A DNA stretch of 57,733 nucleotides, the filler included, from Platydemus manokwari (lineage: Eukaryota), in NCBI GenBank assembly GCA_037951405.1. It is 5 parts of 5 records of this genome, joined end to end, with 100 filler letters (N's around TTAATTAATTAA, not from the genome) between each part and the next. Parts side by side here need not be neighbours in the genome. Positions count along the whole stretch, not along the records: positions 48,145 to 57,733 come from JBBMOY011228543.1; 4 more parts are not named here. One strand, written 5' to 3'. This document shows positions 48,145-57,733 of the stretch, piece by piece. The position numbers were made by a program, and so were the translations under genes. Under the pieces are notes generated by a model, which ran no database searches, was not told the origin of the DNA, and saw only the letters and a list, made by a program, of their open reading frames with translations. Every line of letters begins with the position of its first letter. Position 1 is the first letter of the stretch.

Positions 48145-48753
48145 ATAATTTAATTATTAAATTTCTTATATAACACAATATGCAAATTAGTGTCCCGACT
48201 TATGAGTAAAGCTTTAATTCTTTAATTTTAATTTAATTAAAATGATGCAATTTTATTTAATGCTTATGATTAATTTTAATGGATTGAACCTGGTCAAAAT
48301 AAAACTTAAAAGTTATTAGCGTAAACTGACTAAGTTCTAAGAGCGGTTGCTTGAACTTATAAGCTCGACCATCAGTGAGCTATCCAACATTGAAGGAGAC
48401 TTAATTTTGAATCTTAGAACCCTATCAAAAAGTAATCAAACAATGATATCTGGTTATTGTCTCATAAAAGTATAGCAATTTTATGTATATTAAACTAATT
48501 TGGCAAGTTATTTCGTAGATCAAATTCGGCAGATTGATATAACTGATTCCCCAGTGAATATCATATGATAATTTAATACATATCACCGAGGAAAATTAAC
48601 AAACTTGAATATAAAGTAAAGCTTTTATACAATAATCATAAACAAAATATTAATTATTTTAGAAAAATACCAATTCAAAATAACACTGAAGCATAATATT
48701 GGAATATTAATGTTAATTAGTTGCAAAAATATTGAAAATAATATGAATATCAA

Positions 48754-51700
48754 TCATCTACTGTACATCACACCAATTTCAATCCCAGAACAACAAGAAA
48801 TATCTCTCAACTCTAGATTTCTGAAAGGGAATATGAACATAAAATAAATAAAATTTTTATAACAAACCCATTAGACTCGATTTTCCACCACTGATTTGAC
48901 TTGAGTTTCCTGTGCAAAATCGTTGATCCATAATTGTTTTTTACTATCACAGCACGCGGTGAATATAATATATCTCCGTTATCAGCTAAATAAATAAAGA
49001 TTATTACAGATCAATTGATTGATAAGGCTTATACATGGAATTCTAATATCATCACATATTTTCTCAAAAAAGATCAAATTTATCTCATTTGAATATCTGT
49101 ACATATCTGACAAAAATAAAGTTATCAAAAGATTATGACAAATAATTGATAATTACGAATAAACAGATATTGTGGAGCAAGACTAATAACTCGTTTCAAC
49201 TTCAACTGAACAAAATTACAACAATGCCAATTCTAGTAAAATATAATGAGTATAAATCAGAAATATAAAAAGTACATTCATTTCGTGTTTTTGTGGAGTG
49301 AATAAATGCAAAATTGCCTCTGTAGATGACATAGAAAATTCTTTAATTATTTTCAAAATAACACATTCAATTTTGAGAAAATATTACTTGATACTGGTAT
49401 AGTTATTCCAATCATTTTTTGATATAGATTTGAATGAATTTGTGAACAATTCTCACAATATCCAGTTAAACTTTCTTTAGCAAAGAATAAATCTAAAATG
49501 TAAAAAGTATAATAAATATTATTATTTACTGATTATGTAATAAAAATGTTTTCAGTAAATGAAATTATTTTGAAAAGTAAAAAAGTTTATTACACATTCC
49601 CGTAAATGAGCGCGAGTGTTTCTCCTGTATTTTTGTGCTTAACTCAAATCAAGTTTTCGGTTTGCTCTATCACATAGGGTTTTTCCAGGACATGTGGATT
49701 GAAATTTTTATTATTTGAAGAGAAAAAAGGTTCTGGAATAGATATGTATATTTATGGCCACAAAAAGGAGCTCTTTTCGAAATTATATTAGGTTATTTCA
49801 AATGCTCATAGCTTTGAATTTTAGAGTTCGAAAAAAATTCCAGAAATTGTAATAATTATCCATAATCGTTCTTCTATGTTTGTGTTGTAGTGATATCTAA
49901 ATATAGAAAAAACTTTACTCCTCTCATTACTAAGTGCCATGAACTCTGTCTTCGATGTAGGATTAGATATTAAGTGAAAGCTTGGATTTGAATTTTTAAT
50001 AATTAAATTTATATCAAAATAAAATACAATTAATAATATAGTGATAAATAATAATATTAATCTATTTATATCATAATTAATATCATAATCTTTCAGAATA
50101 AACAGTATATTTAGTTAGTGTTTATTTGCGATTAATAATTTATTTTATTTTCCTTAGCTTTATTAAAAGAACTAAAAAACTACTTTAGCGGTTAATTAAA
50201 TAAAAATAAAATAATTATTTGGCCAACCTTAATAAAGATAAATATTTTCCAGCGTAGCACAGAAATAAAACAAAAATTACCGTATACAAATCCAACATTC
50301 TGAGATGTTTCATGAGGACTTAATTTTTTTTTAAAAACCGAATTTATTTTTTCTAACAAAAACGAGTAACATTTGAATAAATCAAAGCTGAAACACAAAT
50401 AAATAAAAATCAAATAATTTTTTAAAAAAATAATTTTAAATATCAATTTTAGGAATAAATTTTTTACTAAATGAGAAATCCAAAAAAAACTTATTTATTT
50501 ATCCGCTCACATGTTCGAATCGGTTTAATATTGTTTCCAATTATAACCGTAGATAAATTGGTTTTCTAATGACGTTAATAATTGCTAAAACTTCAATTGC
50601 AAAACAATCTCAAAATTTGATCATTTTATCATTTGAAAATAGAATCAAATATATTATTAATTTAAGTGAAATTTGGAGTTATTTTTGTAAATACATGACT
50701 TCAATTGTCAAATCCATTTTTAAAGTCTTCATTAGTTAATCAATTGTTGGGTGTAAACGAATACAAAAATAATATTTGGATCCGAAAGTTCTGTACATCA
50801 GATAATTATTTCTAAACCATTTGAAACACATTAAGATTTTGAAATTTTTTTTTAAATGTTACATTTCGAAAAAAGAAAAAAATACTTCTGAGCAAATTTT
50901 TAATAAAAAGTTAAAAAGTAAAAACAACGTAATTTCTATCATTTTATAAATTTGATTTGTATGACATTAAATTTGTATAAATTCATCAAACAATTTTTAA
51001 TTTAAAAGTTATTTAAATCAGTAATTAAATGATATTCGTGCAAGTTTTCTACCTACTAATAACATAATTATACTTTAATATTTGAAATGAAAGAGTTTAT
51101 AAAGATATCAACTTATAATTGAATCAATATATCAATTTCAAATGAATTTTAATATAAACAAATGCAAATAAGATGTGAAGAAAGAGAAAATTAATTGAAA
51201 GATATATTAACAAATAATAAAAGCACACAACTAAGGACCTTCAAAGCTCATTTGAACACGATTAGTCTGGTATAATGACATTGTTTATTTATGGATAAAT
51301 ATATTTTTCCGGTGATTTTTTGCTTTTTCCAAGTTTGATTTTTTCAAGTAATTGTGTATTTTTTAATTCATATTTAATATAAGGCAAATAAATATATTAC
51401 AAAGAATAATTTCCAAAAATAAGTTTAAAATTTCTCAGGGGTTCCACAGCTATGACTATAATCCATCATGGAAGATAATTTCAATTGTATTCAGAAATGA
51501 GTGTGTATACATAAAATCTATCACTTTGTTTAACTCAGTTATTGTTTTCCAATTAATTATTGAGCTGTTGTTAAGTCATCTTTGAAAATGATTAACGTTT
51601 GGAAATACTTAAAATCTTAGGTGTTAAGAATGGCGAAAGTCTTTCTTCGTAGACAATTAACACACCGCAATTCATATATATATAACTGTTTAACTGAAGT

Positions 51701-54700
51701 GCACATAAAATGTAATTTAAACGTGTTATAATATTGAAATATACAAATATATAAGTTAAGAAGCTCCTTGATAAATGTGATGCTCATCTTTAGCTTATTC
51801 AATTTAATGGTCAATCTGGCAATAGTTAAAATATAAGTAAATTTAATATGATAACCGTCATCAATTTTATAAAACATTGTAATTATAAATCACAACAGAC
51901 TACAAAACCAGAATTATCAGTAAACATGGTCGAAATAATTTCAAATCAACAATAGACAATCACGCAAAATGGGATTAGCAATCGAATGTCAAACGGCAAA
52001 ACAGATGTCAATCACAAAGACTAATCAGATAAATATATTTCAGCATTCAATATTTTATTAAATAAAAGTTTTAAAAATTCTGAAAACATTCCATCATGAT
52101 ATTTAATTTATAAAATTTGTCAGAATTAATTACCCAAACCGATTTTAATTATAAAGATAGATTCTCGATAATTTATAACTTTAAAAATAATATTACTCTT
52201 GTGAAGATTCCGAAATGTTCCATTTGATTGTTTTCACTGATTCTATAATTCTATCATGAGCACCATCAACAACGAAATGAAGTAATTGACATAAATCTAG
52301 AATATTTTAAATATGTAATCATACAGAAATCTATTATAAGCAAAAATTAAATAATACATAAAGGTTTGAATTTATTTATAAATGCAAAGAAGCTGATTAA
52401 AATTAATTTAAAATGATATAAATTAAATAAAATCCAAATACAAGGAATGAGGCACTTTAGATTCATCATTCATAAATTTGTAGAATTAGAGTTGCCAATC
52501 AATCTAAAGATGTTTCATGTAAATTTTAAGAATGACGCAAAATATAATCTTTCATTAGCATCGAATCCAATATTCAAATTTTATAAAGATATTAATATTT
52601 AAATTATTTTAGTGTTATTAATTGAATATTGATTGATATTGAATCGAATCGAGTGGATTTTCAATTAATTTAACCTCAATTGATCTTGACAGGAGTAAAT
52701 CTTGAAAATTAAAACTTATTTTCAAAATTCATCAATGTCCAACCAAAATATATTTTCTAATTTAATATTTCAATAAAACAATACACAAGATTAAGACGGT
52801 GTATTAAATAGTTTTTAAATTTCGTAACATTATCGTTATTATATTTTCTCTCAAATTCTAGTTTATCATTGATTTCAAAAAATTTCTTATTTGATTGAAG
52901 GCCTATTTGTGTTATTTGCAAATCGACTTAAATTATTTCTTAAAATCATAAAAATAAAAATCAATCATAAGAATGGTTATATCTTAAAAAATTCGCGAGC
53001 TAAAGTTAACATCAATCCTTGCTACTTCAATGAAACACCAAAAGAAATAGTAAATTTTTCAAAAGTAATTTACCAACAAAATACAGTTTATTAGGAAATA
53101 ATATAAAATTGGTTAATCTCAGTTTCATATCGTGCAAGTACAGATCTTTATTTCTATGAAATCTTGTTAGGATTGCTTTAACATTTGAAGTTAAGATTTT
53201 CAAAATTGTTTGAAGACAGACTAAAGATATAAATGATTGAAAATTATCTAGATTTTTTTAATATAATTATAATGATTATGAGATTCTGTTTACTGAACTG
53301 CTGACAATTATTCCGACATAAAGTCTTCTGGCAGACTCATATAGAAATTCTTTCCACTCATAAGTATCTGATAGGACATCGAATCGAGCTCCACGCTAGC
53401 ACGTTCAATGTCAGAAATAATTACAATTAAATTGTGAGAAATTGTTATGATTTAATTTTGATTTTATCTCAGCATATCTTTCATAGTAATAAATTATTAT
53501 TGAATTTAAATTTTTCTCAAAGAATGAGATAATCAAAGTTACAAACCATTGATAAAAATCAAATCTTGGACTGTTAAATCTGGATATAATTTTAAATCTA
53601 ATTTAGCAATTTCATCGCTATTGTGTAATTCCAGCAATCTTTCTACAAAAGGTGAACAAGCAAAAAGCATTCCCAATATTAATACAGAAGAGTTTACATC
53701 CTAAATGTATAGAAAATAATGTGTATAATTAATATTATTTAGATTACATTATTACAATTTAGAGTTATTGCAATTGACTTGAGTGTTTTTTCAAAGAGTT
53801 CTTCGTTAACATTGTCATCATGTTGATCATGTAATATCTCTTTATCAAAATTCTTCAGAATATCAGAATAAATCTCCTCCAGAATGTCTCTGGCGAATTC
53901 GTGCACAGAAAATTGATCAATTACTATATCTTTAACATCATTAAGACACTCAATAATTGAATAATTCAGAATGTCAGAATAAATCTCATCGAGAATTAGT
54001 GTGTAAGTTGTATGAGAATCTTCAATAAAATCGGAATTATCATCATTTTGCTGAAATAGTGCTTCATTTGCCTTAGAATAAGAATTTTCAATTTTATTTT
54101 CATCTTGTATTTCAATAATATTAGGAAAGTGTTTCTCCAATAATCCTTTATCTTTTTCATTCTTCTTACTGACACTGCTTTCGATATAAATATTGATGGA
54201 TGAAACAGAATCACTAAATTGTTCCAAAAGTTCCATCATAACACCCGCCACATTATAAGTCACCAAATCTTTCTCTGTAATTTCATGGGACCTGTAAAAA
54301 AGAATATTTCATAAAATTTTAAAATAGGCATGATTCATTATTCAAAGTGAGTATCAAAATTTTTGAAAATCTTCTTTTAACCAAATAACTCCAAGTGCAA
54401 AAATATATGATTTCTCTCTACTTTGTCAAATAAATGCCTGAAGATGTTCAACATTTCTTAGAAAACATTTAGAATTTCGGTATTCTCTTGATGGAAATCT
54501 TAAATATACAAACATATTCGAATGTACAACTAATGAGTTACAATGTGTACAATGTATAATGTTTTTAAATATAAAATAGATAGAAAATGTAATAAATTTA
54601 TCACGACATTCAAAATTAACAAAATAACAATTATAGTTTTAATGCGTTATGACAGAACAGATTGTTCTGTAAAAAATATACACTAGGTGGATCTTATTAG

Positions 54701-57166
54701 TCAATTTTTATGCAGTTTTACATAAATGAAAATTAAATATAATGATTCTGCTTTCACTTTTCATGCACAGAATTCATTCTATCGTTGTAAATTTATGATC
54801 CTCATTTATAAGATCATTTATTTCAATATTGGAGAGTAATACAAGAGATGCAGTGTATAAGAACCATTCATATAGTTTGAGTGTTAAATGCAAGTAACTA
54901 CACTAATATGATTATTAAAAAAGTTTCATTAAAAAATTATTGAATTATTTCATTTTTTGCAATCAGGGGCGGTCAAGCTTGGTAATTTTGCCCATAAATA
55001 TATCTACAAATATACATATAATAACTTGTATATAATCATAAAATGTTTGAGATAATTGTGTCCGTAAGACATTTGCAAAACCAAGAAAAATATTTGTTAT
55101 AAACATATTTCAGAATGATTTTCAAAATCAACCTCCTGAAATATTTTTTCTATTATTAAATTCCATATCTTTCTGAAGCTGTATCGAGGAAATATCGGTT
55201 TTATTTGATAATTTGAGGTTTTTTAAACCAATTTTAATACATCCTGGTATAACTGAATCGGAACCTAGTAATATCCATTTAAATATTTAAGAACATGATT
55301 CTTTTTAGAATTTTACAAATTTTTGTAAACTTATGAAGATTGCCCCCGTAATCCATTTATTCCATTCATAACGCAATTTATGTTTTAAAGATTTGCAGAC
55401 AGAAATATCTAAACCTTAGGTAATTTTGGGTAAACCAGAAGGTGTAATGGTAATTGAGAGTATTTTTTTTATTAATTTCTCATTTATTAATAATGATTCG
55501 GGATAAAAGAAACTATCAATCTCGTATTTCCAAATTTTACTTCTTAATTTTTCATCAATTATTGACTCAAACAATCTTTTCCATTAACTTTAAAAACTAT
55601 TCCTAATTTAATTTTCACTATTGGTACTGTTTTTCTTTACAAAATTACTATTGTTGTGAATTTACCGATCATACAAATGTGAAGCTACATTTAATCAAAA
55701 GCCAAGTTACTCGGCATGTCCAAAGTTATCAGAAATTTATCAATAATTTCTTATCGAATTTATTCATTTAAATTTCATTGATTATTTCTTCTAATAAATT
55801 ATAAAAAAACGGTAATTGAAAATAAAAATCTTATTGAAATATAATTAAAATTCACTCACTCGAAATCTTCATAGGTCCTCAAATTTTTGTTTATATCAGT
55901 GACCAAATATTTAATATCATTTGCGTCATTAAGTTGATGCAAAATTGACTTTAGCGAATATATTTTATTTCCTGATCAAGATGAACAAATATTAATATGT
56001 ACTTGTAACAACAGAATACAAACCAGGTAAATGGACTGTATTTACCAATATAAGGGATTTTCTAAAAGTCGAATTTTTCTCGAAACCTATACAAATCAAT
56101 TTAATAAAATAAATAAATTATTTACATAAGAATAAATATTTGGGAGTACAGCACATTTCTAAGTTAGTGGAAACGTTTTGATAAGATTCGTTTATCTTTA
56201 CAACATTAATGTGAATTTGAACACAGACAACAATTAATTTACATTCTTTTCAGTCGAAGACCTTAGACCATGAATATATTTTTCAATAGATTCTTGGAGA
56301 CTTTCCTCCTTTTCCTAAAATTTAAATTTAATAATATGATTTCTTGTAAAATTATAAGGTTTACTGAGAACTGAAATGGGGAAAAATATTTGATAAAAAT
56401 TTACAATTTCAGAATAGATTTTATAATTGATGTTTAATCAAATTGTTTCAATGAAAAACGAATAATTTAAAAAATAAAACTAATATTTAATTCTACATAC
56501 ATAAAAACAAATCAAGAATTTAATCAATTAATTCATGAACTATACACAACGTGTTTGACCAAGTTCATTATTTAACCATTAAATTTACAAAACTATGAAA
56601 ACAAAAACTAATTAAAATCAGATAAACACAAAATTCATTTCCATGTATGCACCATTTTGAATTGATAAATTATGAATTGCAAAAAGTGCTCTACTACGCA
56701 CGAAGCGACATTTGGTAAGACATTTTATCTTCAAGGGGTTTATCAATGAATGCAAAGAAAAATTAATTAGTATTAAATCATGTGAAAAGCCAATTTTTCT
56801 TATTTTGAATATTAACATCTTACGATGAAGTTTCAAAATAGAAAACAACAAATATATTTATCAAACTCCGAAAATTATTATACAAGTTAAAAAAGATATT
56901 TAATTAAATACTACGTCAAAATACAATATTCAAACAAAGACGAGATTTTTATTGCTAATAAGTGATGAGTTCTTATTTTACCAGGTTATTAGAATTCTAT
57001 TACATAAAAGTAATTTAAACAGTAAAAATATCATCATTGTTTTAATTCTAAACAATAATTACCGTTAGTGGCAATGAAATAGCCACGAATGGATTAATTT
57101 CTTTTTCAAATACATGTTCGCATTTCAAACATTTACTTTTTAAAGACATTCTTCCAGTAAACAAGT
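48754..57166 (-). CDS. Multi-exon protein with two tandem, catalytically degenerate USP (peptidase C19) domains; 5'-partial
   Basis: Domain 1 exons 57166-57063 (LFTGRMSLKSKCLKC...PFVAISLPL), 56314-56243, 56195-56126 (TPKYLFL), 56086-56024, 55971-55860 (YSLKSILH), then ~54498-54380. Acidic linker exon 54291-53748. Domain 2 exons 53700-53547 (Cys-box helix LGMLFACSPF), 52296-52197 (LCQLLHFVVDGAHDRI), 49492-49388 (LFF...CENC...ITIP), 49340-49276, 49232-49157 (APQYLFI), 49106-49035, 48985-48868 (YSPRAVIV...QWW) and 48820-48754 (VMYSR*). Some internal exons (49.6-53.4 kb, ~54.4 kb) are not fully resolved. Confidence 0.8.
55130..55813 (-). mobile_element. Degraded pogo-family (DDE_1) transposase relic inside a USP-gene intron
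   Basis: Minus strand: ITLDMPSN, RKTVP..KI..GIVFKVNGK, IDSF, TPSGL..*GLDISVCKSLKHKLRYEWNKW, KWIL..DSV..CIKIG, following pogo motifs (FDMP, LQPLDVSVNK.FK..LR..W..W). A TACCGT-type end lies at ~55813. Confidence 0.75.
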
Positions 57167-57733
57167 CTAAAATAATATAGTACAGATTTTATAGTTCATG
57201 CAAAATTAATGGAAAATTTTATAAAGCGAGACCAAGATATTTTATAGTTGTTGAATTTATAATTCAAATGCTTTATTAATTTTTAGGTACTAAATAAATC
57301 CAATATCAGAAGCAATTTATAAATGATAATATCAAAATATAGATTCTAGTTTATATGCGTCAAAATCTTCAATGATACAAAAAAACAATTACATAAGCGT
57401 TACACAACATTGTAAATAAATATTGTTATATATTATATTTAGTGGTACAAAACACTCATTGAAAAATAAATGATTCTTTTTAGTAGAAATAAATCACATA
57501 TATTATACTCAGACTAATAAGTGAAATTTCATTAAAAAAATAGGTGTCTGAAACTTATTACTTTCTTAACGAATTGAAGAAAAACATACAGAGGAAATAG
57601 AAATATTGGGCTGAAAGTTAAAGAATGATAAAATTGAATAAGAAATTTGAAATATACTGGAAAATATAATATAATCGAAACTTTTGTTGTTATTATCAAA
57701 AATAATTTTGAGATTTAACTAAACTGATATAAT

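What the first reader, a model, noticed from the sequence alone, without database searches (positions are those of the whole stretch)
48754..57166. Tandem double-USP pseudo-deubiquitinase made by internal domain duplication
Seen: manual splicing of the minus strand gives two USP-fold domains in one reading path, separated by a 181-codon acidic exon. The domains mirror each other in exon structure. The 'LF...CxxC...LP' exons are 104 vs 105 nt, and intron phases along the fingers/palm run 1,0,0,1,1,2 vs 1,1,0,1,1,2, with introns at the same place after P-x-YLF(L/I). Established: active USPs need the Cys box (GNTC), His box (H-x-G...GHY) and a following Asn/Asp. Seen: domain 2 reads LNCNNDVNSSVLILGML over the Cys box, YSPRAVIVKNNYGST over the His box and WWKIES in place of W..FND; domain 1 reads ILHQLNDANDIKY in place of GHY. 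Inference: an intact, spliced, two-domain pseudo-enzyme that may act as a di-ubiquitin or substrate scaffold. I know no characterised animal USP with this architecture; known inactive ones (USP39, PAN2) have a single domain.
Basis: partly seen in the sequence, partly recalled or inferred. Interest (0 to 1): 0.78.

Follow-up and report, generated by a model that had tools for sequence, protein, structure and literature searches.

The report
Two degenerate USP-like domains, one frame
On the minus strand, 15 cleanly spliced exons read as one open frame with two diverged, apparently non-catalytic copies of a ubiquitin-protease (USP) domain joined by an acidic linker, but no RNA data show that both copies sit in one transcript.

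Summary
Fifteen GT-AG exons on the minus strand (57166 to 48754) give one open frame of 602 codons ending in TGA. Fingers exons are 104 and 105 nt, the linker exon holds 181 codons (pI 4.3), and intron phases are 1,0,0,1,1,2 and 1,1,0,1,1,2. Nine introns are 39-68 nt. Chains like this do not arise on the plus strand or in shuffles.

Two corrections:
- The "54498" exon cannot join 54291 in frame and ends in a stop. The direct 55860-to-54291 splice is in frame.
- Domain 2 keeps a His (ILHRK) at the canonical His-box spacing.

USP identity is weakly supported. Exon a's best PDB matches are USP1 fingers (E 0.05-0.7) and its nearest ESM Atlas clusters carry PF00443. No domain-2 exon is recognised by any tool. 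It is tied to domain 1 only by exon-anchored similarity (z 5.5) and shared intron positions.

The spliced protein has no reference, so it was not given to Pfam or AlphaFold. No RNA run and no relatives were found.

Best reading (about 0.5): one gene encoding a tandem pseudo-USP. Main rival (about 0.3): two tandem paralogous genes, or an alternative terminal exon at 54498.

The parts
57063..57166 (-). Exon a, domain 1 fingers (LFTGRMSLKSKCLKCEHVFEKEINPFVAISLPLT); 104 nt, enters in phase 1, leaves in phase 0
   Evidence: Best PDB matches are USP1 fingers (E 0.054-0.19 for the ORF piece; 0.24-0.71 for the exact exon). The ten nearest named ESM Atlas clusters all share the PF00443 family or clan, top score 0.92.
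56243..56314 (-). Exon b, domain 1 (EKEESLQESIEKYIHGLRSSTEKN), phase 0 to 0
   Evidence: ttttag acceptor and gtaaat donor.
56126..56195 (-). Exon x, domain 1 (..NLEMCCTPKYLFL), ends in phase 1 straight after YLFL
   Evidence: Upstream intron is 47 nt. Paralogous to exon g (x/g alignment z 2.4).
56024..56086 (-). Exon y, domain 1 (CFEKNSTFRKSLILVNTVHLPG), phase 1 to 1
   Evidence: Flanking introns are 39 and 52 nt.
55860..55971 (-). Exon H1, domain 1 His-box region (NKIYSLKSILHQLNDANDIKYLVTDINKNLRTYEDF); Lys where the catalytic His is expected; donor GA|gtgagt in phase 2
54426..54498 (-). Candidate alternative terminal exon (E-FPSREYRNSKCFLRNVEHLQAFI-stop). It is in frame with the H1 donor but cannot be joined in frame to 54291
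   Evidence: The acceptor scores 7.0 on a small PWM trained on the other model acceptors. 13 of 59 AG sites in this interval give 24 or more open codons, so the open stretch is unremarkable.
53748..54291 (-). Linker exon, 544 nt, 181 codons, acidic (pI 4.26). Starts SHEITEKDLVTYNVAGVMME (possible last strand of domain 1) and ends KSIAITLNCNN (start of the domain-2 Cys-box region). Enters in phase 2, leaves in phase 0
   Evidence: 184 open codons from the acceptor, the longest in the interval. No relatives found. AlphaFold2 single-sequence model has pLDDT 38.
53849..53996 (-). Two 37-nt direct repeats inside the linker exon (53849-53885 and 53960-53996), 111 nt apart (in frame), encoding IL(D/E)EIYSDIL(N/K)
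   Evidence: family D1, 86% identity.
53547..53700 (-). Exon d, domain 2 (DVNSSVLILGMLFACSPFVERLLEL...), reached over a 47-nt intron. No Cys at the nucleophile position
   Evidence: No PDB, Pfam or Atlas recognition. Motif likeness to the USP1/12/46 helix after the Cys box rests on memory only.
52197..52296 (-). Exon e, domain 2 (D-LCQLLHFVVDGAHDRII..), in the position of the QQDAHEFL block
   Evidence: Phase 1 in, phase 2 out. Motif reading only.
50281..50387 (-). Exon m, domain 2 (FDLFKCYSFLLEKINSVFKKKLSPHETSQNVGFVY), phase 2 to 1
   Evidence: tttcag acceptor and gtaatt donor. This exon is needed to keep the frame between e and f.
49388..49492 (-). Exon f, domain 2 fingers (LFFAKESLTGYCENCSQIHSNLYQKMIGITIPVS), 105 nt
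   Evidence: a/f alignment z 6.75. Not recognised as USP on its own.
49276..49319 (-). Exon k, domain 2 (K-AILHLFTPQKHEMN)
   Evidence: Flanking introns are 68 and 43 nt.
49157..49232 (-). Exon g, domain 2 (NWHCCNFVQLKLKRVISLAPQYLFI), ends in phase 1 after YLFI
49035..49106 (-). Exon y2, domain 2 (H-MYRYSNEINLIFFEKICDDIRIP)
   Evidence: Flanking introns are 50 and 49 nt.
48868..48985 (-). Exon h, domain 2 His-box region (DNGDILYSPRAVIVKNNYGSTILHRKLKSNQWWKIESN). A His lies 17 residues after the Tyr. Donor in phase 2
   Evidence: The only PDB matches are chance SH3 hits.
48754..48820 (-). Terminal exon (G-NLELRDISCCSGIEIGVMYSR-TGA)
   Evidence: cctttcag acceptor after a 47-nt intron. GVM lies at the same offset as in the start of the linker exon (p about 0.09 on its own).

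Best explanation
This is one protein-coding gene of an AT-rich, intron-rich eukaryote. Its 5' end lies beyond the piece. Its product carries two USP-type (peptidase C19) modules in tandem.

Domain 1 is seen only from the fingers onward. It resembles USP1/12/46 in its fingers exon and has Lys where the catalytic His should be.

Its last exon junction (phase 2, 55860) splices to the 544-nt exon at 54291. That exon would supply the final strand of domain 1 (..VAGVMME..), then about 145 acidic residues with an in-frame duplicated IL(D/E)EIYSDIL motif, then the start of domain 2 (..ITLNCNN).

Domain 2 runs through nine more exons to a stop at 48754. It has no Cys at the nucleophile position and Glu-Ser where the F-D/N-D motif is expected, but it keeps a His at the canonical spacing.

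Shown: the open spliced frame, the paired exon layout and the residue replacements.

Inferred:
- Both modules still fold like USPs.
- Neither hydrolyses ubiquitin.
- The protein acts as a non-catalytic binding scaffold for ubiquitin or ubiquitin chains, or for a WD40-type partner of the USP1/12/46 kind, with the acidic linker as a flexible or interaction segment.
For: One open frame across 15 GT-AG exons, 602 codons.

Nine introns fall in a tight 39-68 nt class, median 47.

The short-intron chains (850 nt; up to 7 introns) far exceed the plus strand and shuffles.

Coding periodicity is present in all three parts, and stop frequency in introns is 0.082 per codon.

The H1 donor and the 54291 acceptor are both phase 2. 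That acceptor opens the only long frame in the interval, 184 codons.

The linker-to-d intron is 47 nt, the modal size, and is phase 0.

The start of the linker exon parallels the terminal exon of domain 2: same intron phase, and GVM at the same offset.

Exon-anchored similarity of the two half-domains has z 5.5, with 0 of 3000 shuffles reaching it. The unanchored local alignment is 23% identical, with 18 of 2000 shuffles reaching it.

The fingers pattern occurs twice against 0.003 expected.

Exon a's best PDB matches are USP1 fingers, and its nearest ESM Atlas clusters carry PF00443.

A separate 5176-nt Logan contig spans 52349-57524 with no differences, so the junction of the two modules is not an assembly join.
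Against: There is no RNA evidence at all.

The interval between the modules holds an exon-like stretch (54498-54426) in frame with the H1 donor. It ends in a stop after 23 codons, about the size of domain 2's terminal exon. Its acceptor scores higher than that of 54291 on a small PWM. An in-frame Met-Met follows 17 codons into the linker exon. Two genes therefore remain possible.

The linker-start / terminal-exon likeness is weak on its own (p about 0.09).

No profile or structure search recognises any domain-2 exon.

Exon a's PDB E-values are not significant by themselves.

The spliced protein could not be tested against PF00443 or folded.

No orthologues were found, so selection is untested.

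Exons were chosen to keep the frame open, which flatters the model.
Confidence: 0.5

Rival explanations
1. There are two tandem paralogous USP-like genes, or one gene with an alternative 3' exon. Gene 1 would end in the exon 54498-54426 (..YEDFE-FPSREYRNSKCFLRNVEHLQAFI-stop). Gene 2 would start at the Met-Met at about 54240 inside the acidic exon. It could be reached from its own 5' exon or, if the organism trans-splices, by leader addition at the 54291 acceptor about 135 nt after the stop.
For: The 54498 exon is in frame with the H1 donor, has a usable acceptor (PWM 7.0 against 4.1 for 54291) and ends after 23 codons, like domain 2's terminal exon (21 codons). An in-frame Met-Met lies 17 codons into the linker exon. 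By general knowledge, tandem gene copies are far commonest outcome of duplication compared with two-domain fusions. The frame match between 55860 and 54291 has a one-in-three chance.
Against: 13 of 59 AG sites in that interval give 24 or more open codons in this phase, so the 54498 stretch is not special. It places its hydrophobic strand (CFL) only 13 residues after the Asp, against 16-17 in domain 2 and in the linker-exon reading. The frame is open from the 54291 acceptor onward. An out-of-frame ATG with an 8-codon upstream ORF precedes the Met-Met. The start of the linker exon shares GVM at the same offset as domain 2's last exon.
Confidence: 0.3
2. The locus is a decaying pseudogene array. 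It would hold relics of duplicated USP genes that are no longer expressed, with the open path an artefact of choosing splice sites in AT-rich DNA.
For: Catalytic residues are lost in both copies. Domain-2 exons are unrecognisable to Pfam, PDB and Atlas searches. No relatives were found. My first path search found 445 lenient splice paths between two anchor exons of domain 1, which shows how easily a path can be found.
Against: Open spliced chains of this length and this many short introns never arose in 40 shuffles or on the other strand. Codon-position GC periodicity is present in all three parts. All 14 introns keep GT-AG and a tight size class. With 0.082 stops per intron codon, 602 open codons are not expected without selection.
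Confidence: 0.12
3. The gene is real but domain 2, or both modules, are not USP folds. The CxxC-containing exons would belong to some other zinc-ribbon protein and the USP likeness would be a motif coincidence.
For: No significant profile hit was found anywhere. The exon f profile hits are small zinc-finger families at E about 0.005. Adding exon f to exon a in a profile weakened the USP1 match.
Against: Exon a's best PDB matches are six USP1 sequences aligned exactly over the fingers motif. All ten of its nearest named Atlas clusters share the PF00443 family or clan. The family blocks appear in the right order in domain 2: helix after the Cys box, QQDAHEFL-like block, LF..CxxC, P.YLF, Y...AV..., W..., then a hydrophobic strand before the stop. 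That block order is compared from memory of the family.
Confidence: 0.08

Closest known systems
USP1 / USP12 / USP46 clade of ubiquitin-specific proteases (peptidase C19)
   Same: Exon a aligns with the USP1 fingers strand-turn (LF.G..L...CL.CE......F..IS.P), and USP1 sequences are its best PDB matches. From memory of USP12/46: the helix after the Cys box (NS.VL..L.F.C.PF) and a protein end shortly after the last hydrophobic strand (VMYSR-stop against LFYQSRD-stop) look alike in domain 2.
   Different: The catalytic His is replaced in domain 1. There is no nucleophile Cys in domain 2, and the second CxxC pair of the zinc ribbon is altered in both. Two modules sit in one frame, whereas these enzymes have one. 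The USP1-type inserts were not seen. No significant sequence score was obtained.
USP39/Sad1 and PAN2 (USP52), non-catalytic USP-fold proteins
   Same: Each has a USP-type module lacking catalytic residues, used as a structural or interaction module rather than a hydrolase (PMC3988567, PMC3632086; review PMC10919355).
   Different: Those have a single USP module joined to other domains (ZnF-UBP; WD40 and an exonuclease) and are conserved across eukaryotes. This locus has two USP-like modules with an orphan acidic linker and no detectable relatives.
Ordinary tandem duplicates of USP genes
   Same: Two collinear copies on one strand share intron positions.
   Different: Here no stop codon separates the copies along the best splice path. 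The exon between them is open for 181 codons.

Membership tests
USP / peptidase C19 (Pfam PF00443, PF13423) | Whole-domain profile match above the gathering score | tested here: inconclusive
   Single exons and ORF pieces give no UCH hit, as expected for 23-51-residue pieces. The spliced protein has no reference and was not submitted.
USP / peptidase C19 | Fingers zinc-ribbon block LF-x-G...C-x-x-C...[LIV]-x-[LIV]-P | tested here: met
   Present in both modules against 0.003 expected per shuffle. Exon a's best PDB matches are USP1 fingers and its nearest Atlas clusters carry PF00443. Exon f is not recognised alone.
USP / peptidase C19 | Cys box with nucleophile Cys (G-N-T-C-[FYW]) | tested here: not met
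   Domain 2 reads LNCNN|DVNSSVL. Under either register against the following helix, Asp, Val or Asn sits at the nucleophile position, and the only nearby Cys is about 5 residues upstream. The Cys box of domain 1 lies off the piece and cannot be tested.
USP / peptidase C19 | His box Y-x-L-x-[SAG]-[LIVMFT]-x2-H-x-G-x(4,5)-G-H-Y (PROSITE pattern, from memory) | tested here: not met
   Domain 1 is YSLKSILHQLNDANDIKY, with Lys at the catalytic-His position. Domain 2 is YSPRAVIVKNNYGSTILHR, with His at position 18 but the flanking Gly and Tyr lost. The pattern as a whole fails in both.
USP / peptidase C19 | Asp/Asn after W-x-x-F | tested here: inconclusive
   Domain 1 reads RTYEDFE, so an acidic residue is available. 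Domain 2 reads WWKIESN, with Glu in place of Asp/Asn. Neither register could be fixed without a family profile.
USP / peptidase C19 | USP fold (fingers, palm, thumb) in a structure model | not testable with these tools
   Only contiguous references can be folded. The linker exon alone gave pLDDT 38.
USP1/12/46 clade | Closest sequence relatives are clade members; binding of WDR48/UAF1 at the fingers | tested here: inconclusive
   USP1 chains are the top matches for exon a, but at E 0.05-0.7. No USP12 or USP46 chain was listed. Partner binding cannot be tested here.
Pseudo-deubiquitinases (USP39/PAN2 type) | USP fold retained, catalytic residues lost, gene under purifying selection | tested here: inconclusive
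   Residue loss is shown. The fold is not shown. Selection is inferred only from the intact 602-codon frame. No orthologues were available for dN/dS.

The most novel reading that the evidence does not exclude
The locus is an expressed single polypeptide with two complete USP folds in tandem, both non-catalytic, joined by an acidic linker with a duplicated IL(D/E)EIYSDIL motif. To my knowledge this would be the first tandem-USP pseudoenzyme. It could read ubiquitin chains or hold two ubiquitylated partners or cofactors.
Probability: 0.35. Interest if true: 0.65.

Novelty: new variant of a known kind. Interest (0 to 1): 0.45.

Why it matters
USP-fold pseudoenzymes are few (USP39, PAN2). How a dead protease fold is reused is an open theme in ubiquitin biology. 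I know of no characterised protein with two USP folds in one chain, and full-text searches found none, though those searches were swamped by "universal stress protein" hits. If this protein is real and expressed, it would show that the fold can be duplicated and kept for binding alone. It would also offer a natural two-site ubiquitin or cofactor binder to test.

As things stand, the case rests on one 9.6-kb contig of an unnamed organism. There is no RNA and there are no orthologues, and the first module is cut in half. It is a lead rather than a result.

Tried and rejected
- **Pfam on ORF pieces and exact exons**: no UCH hit, only chance zinc-finger hits for exon f.
- **PDB phmmer on pieces**: exon h gave chance SH3 and LukS matches. 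Exons d and f and the linker gave nothing relevant.
- **Two-row profiles of paired exons, a+f and H1+h**: these weakened rather than improved the USP1 match.
- **Relatives of the linker exon**: word search, HMMER over 1.84 billion representatives and JGI metagenome contigs found none.
- **ESM Atlas** on exons d and f: no usable hit.
- **AlphaFold2 on the linker exon alone**: pLDDT 38, so no fold search was made.
- **RNA evidence**: none. The only holder is a DNA run. Its contigs show continuity but no spliced forms.
- **Rfam and tRNA scans**: empty.
rejected, because it has no phase-compatible donor and has an in-frame stop.
- **My first domain-1 path ending exon y at the gtaaat donor (56046)**: rejected, because it breaks the frame into H1. 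The donor at 56024 restores it.
- **A small acceptor PWM**: it could not separate 54291 from 54498.
- **Left out**: the 602-residue spliced protein and its two modules have no reference, so they were not sent to Pfam, PDB, AlphaFold or the protein searches.

Full report
**What is there.**
The piece (48145-57733) is 25% GC with no N. On the minus strand I rebuilt a splice path from the sequence. It has fifteen exons:
- a 57166-57063
- b 56314-56243
- x 56195-56126
- y 56086-56024
- H1 55971-55860
- linker 54291-53748
- d 53700-53547
- e 52296-52197
- m 50387-50281
- f 49492-49388
- k 49319-49276
- g 49232-49157
- y2 49106-49035
- h 48985-48868
- term 48820-48754

Every intron is GT-AG. The frame is open for 602 codons and ends at TGA 48754. 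The first exon enters in phase 1, so the gene starts beyond the end of the piece.

All of them hold:
- The two LF..CxxC..P exons are 104 and 105 nt.
- The middle exon has 181 full codons and is acidic: 40 D+E against 14 K+R, pI 4.26.
- Intron phases are 1,0,0,1,1,2 and 1,1,0,1,1,2.
- Both copies have a phase-1 intron straight after P-x-YLF(L/I).
- The quoted peptides read as stated.

**Is it more than chance?**
- Nine of the fourteen introns fall in a tight 39-68 nt class, median 47.
- I ran a dynamic search for open spliced chains using short introns only. On the minus strand the longest chain is 850 nt, and the chain with most introns has 7 (621 nt). The plus strand gives 233 nt and 1 intron. 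Forty dinucleotide shuffles give at most 427 nt and 3 introns.
- The fingers pattern occurs twice, against 0.003 expected per shuffle.
- Exons are GC-richer than introns (0.296 against 0.231). Codon-position periodicity shows in the domain-1 exons, the linker and the domain-2 exons alike.
- Stops occur at 0.082 per codon in the introns.
- A lenient path search found 445 ways to link two domain-1 anchor exons. So "an open path exists" is not evidence by itself. The chain statistics and the intron size class carry the argument.

1. Read from the phase-2 H1 donor it gives E-FPSREYRNSKCFLRNVEHLQAFI and then TGA at 54426. Its only GT sites are in phases 0 and 1, while the 54291 acceptor needs phase 2. 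The direct splice 55860 to 54291 is in frame.
2. Domain 2 is not wholly without a His box. In YSPRAVIVKNNYGSTILHRK, a His lies 17 residues after the Tyr. That is the spacing of the catalytic His in the PROSITE His-box pattern (from memory). Its Gly and Tyr neighbours are lost. In domain 1 the same position is Lys (..DIKY).

**Are the modules USP-like?**
For domain 1 the support is modest but comes from two methods. The exon-a piece has USP1 as its six best PDB matches, aligned exactly on the fingers strand-turn. E is 0.054-0.19 for the ORF piece and 0.24-0.71 for the exact exon. In the ESM Atlas feature search, its ten nearest named clusters all share the PF00443 family or clan, with a top score of 0.92.

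For domain 2 no tool recognises any exon. Its USP nature rests on two things:
- Paralogy with domain 1. Exon-anchored alignment gives a summed z of 5.5, with 0 of 3000 shuffles reaching it. This is driven by a/f (z 6.75) and x/g (z 2.4). An unanchored local alignment gives 23% identity, with 18 of 2000 shuffles reaching it.
- The family's conserved blocks appearing in the right order, judged from memory and not tested here. They are a helix after the Cys box (NSSVLILGMLFACSPF), a QQDAHEFL-like block (DLCQLLHFVVDGAHD), the fingers, P.YLF, Y...AV, W..IE, and a hydrophobic strand just before the stop (GVMYSR).

It was therefore not sent to Pfam, PDB, AlphaFold or the protein searches. That step is left out and named.

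**One gene or two?**
This is the crux, and it is not settled.

For one reading frame:
- The H1 donor and the 54291 acceptor share phase 2.
- That acceptor opens 184 codons, the only long frame among 59 AG sites in the interval.
- The exon then leaves over a 47-nt, phase-0 intron into the rest of the domain-2 Cys-box region.
- Its first 21 residues parallel domain 2's terminal exon. The intron phase is the same and GVM lies at the same offset, though this is weak alone (p about 0.09).
- The spacing from the acidic residue to the hydrophobic strand is 16, against 17 in domain 2.

For two genes or an alternative end:
- The 54498 stretch is in frame with H1 and stops after 23 codons, the size of domain 2's last exon.
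- Its acceptor scores above 54291 on a PWM trained on the other 14 sites. That training set is very small.
- An in-frame Met-Met lies 17 codons into the linker exon.
- Against this, 13 of 59 AG sites give 24 or more open codons in that phase, so the stretch is unremarkable.

I put the single-frame tandem protein at about 0.5 and two genes or alternative isoforms at about 0.3.

**Other evidence.**
- No RNA run holds the stretch. The single holder is a DNA run.
- One of its contigs (5176 nt) spans 52349-57524 without a difference. The two modules are therefore contiguous in DNA, and no spliced forms appear.
- The linker has no relatives in the word search, in 1.84 billion representatives, in JGI metagenomes or in the PDB.
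- Alone, it folds at pLDDT 38.
- It contains a 37-nt direct repeat 111 nt apart, in frame, giving two IL(D/E)EIYSDIL motifs.
- There is no DNA-level similarity between the modules. The duplication is therefore old or fast-evolving. Internal duplication cannot be told apart from fusion of tandem genes.

**Mechanism.**
Shown: the frame, the paired exon layout and the residue replacements.

Inferred: a non-catalytic protein. Domain 1 lacks the general-base His, and domain 2 lacks the nucleophile Cys and has Glu-Ser for Asp/Asn-Asp. Its USP-like modules would serve as binding surfaces for ubiquitin or for WD40 partners of the USP1/12/46 type, spaced by an acidic linker. The known pseudo-USPs, USP39/Sad1 and PAN2, use the fold structurally (PMC3988567, PMC3632086, PMC10919355).

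A remodelled active site in domain 2 (Cys of LNCNN with His of ILHRK) is unlikely but not excluded without a model.

**Novelty.**
Full-text searches found no described protein with two USP protease domains. Most hits concerned universal stress proteins. I rate this a new variant of a known kind, of moderate interest, with the main claims still to be tested by RNA data and a fold prediction.

Noticed in passing
window 53849-53885 and 53960-53996 (minus-strand coding): There is an in-frame 37-nt direct repeat, 111 nt apart and 86% identical, inside the acidic linker exon. It gives two IL(D/E)EIYSDIL(N/K) motifs. The acidic-aromatic-x-x-aliphatic shape recalls short linear interaction motifs, but that is only a guess.
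   Followed up: partly
window 48754-57166, introns of the model: Nine of fourteen introns are 39-68 nt (47, 39, 52, 47, 68, 43, 50, 49, 47). The others are 748-1809 nt. This bimodal intron size with a minimum class near 47 nt may help place the unnamed organism.
   Followed up: no
window 54291-54426: Only about 135 nt separate the stop of the candidate exon 54498-54426 from the pyrimidine-rich acceptor at 54291. If the organism uses spliced-leader trans-splicing, this would look like an operon-type junction. An 8-codon out-of-frame upstream ORF starts at 54286.
   Followed up: no
window 53228-53415 and 56048-56235: Summed contig depth in run X1 rises to about 41-42, against about 10 elsewhere. 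A contig of depth 285 touches 53232 and 56105. This suggests short AT-rich stretches shared with high-copy sequence elsewhere in the genome.
   Followed up: no
window 49214-49222 (exon g) and 57122-57133 (exon a): The second Cys pair of the USP zinc ribbon looks altered. Domain 2 has H-C-C (NWHCCNF) where C-x-x-C is expected, and domain 1 has no Cys pair there (INESYQN). Both keep the first C-x-x-C. Zinc binding may be changed or lost.
   Followed up: no
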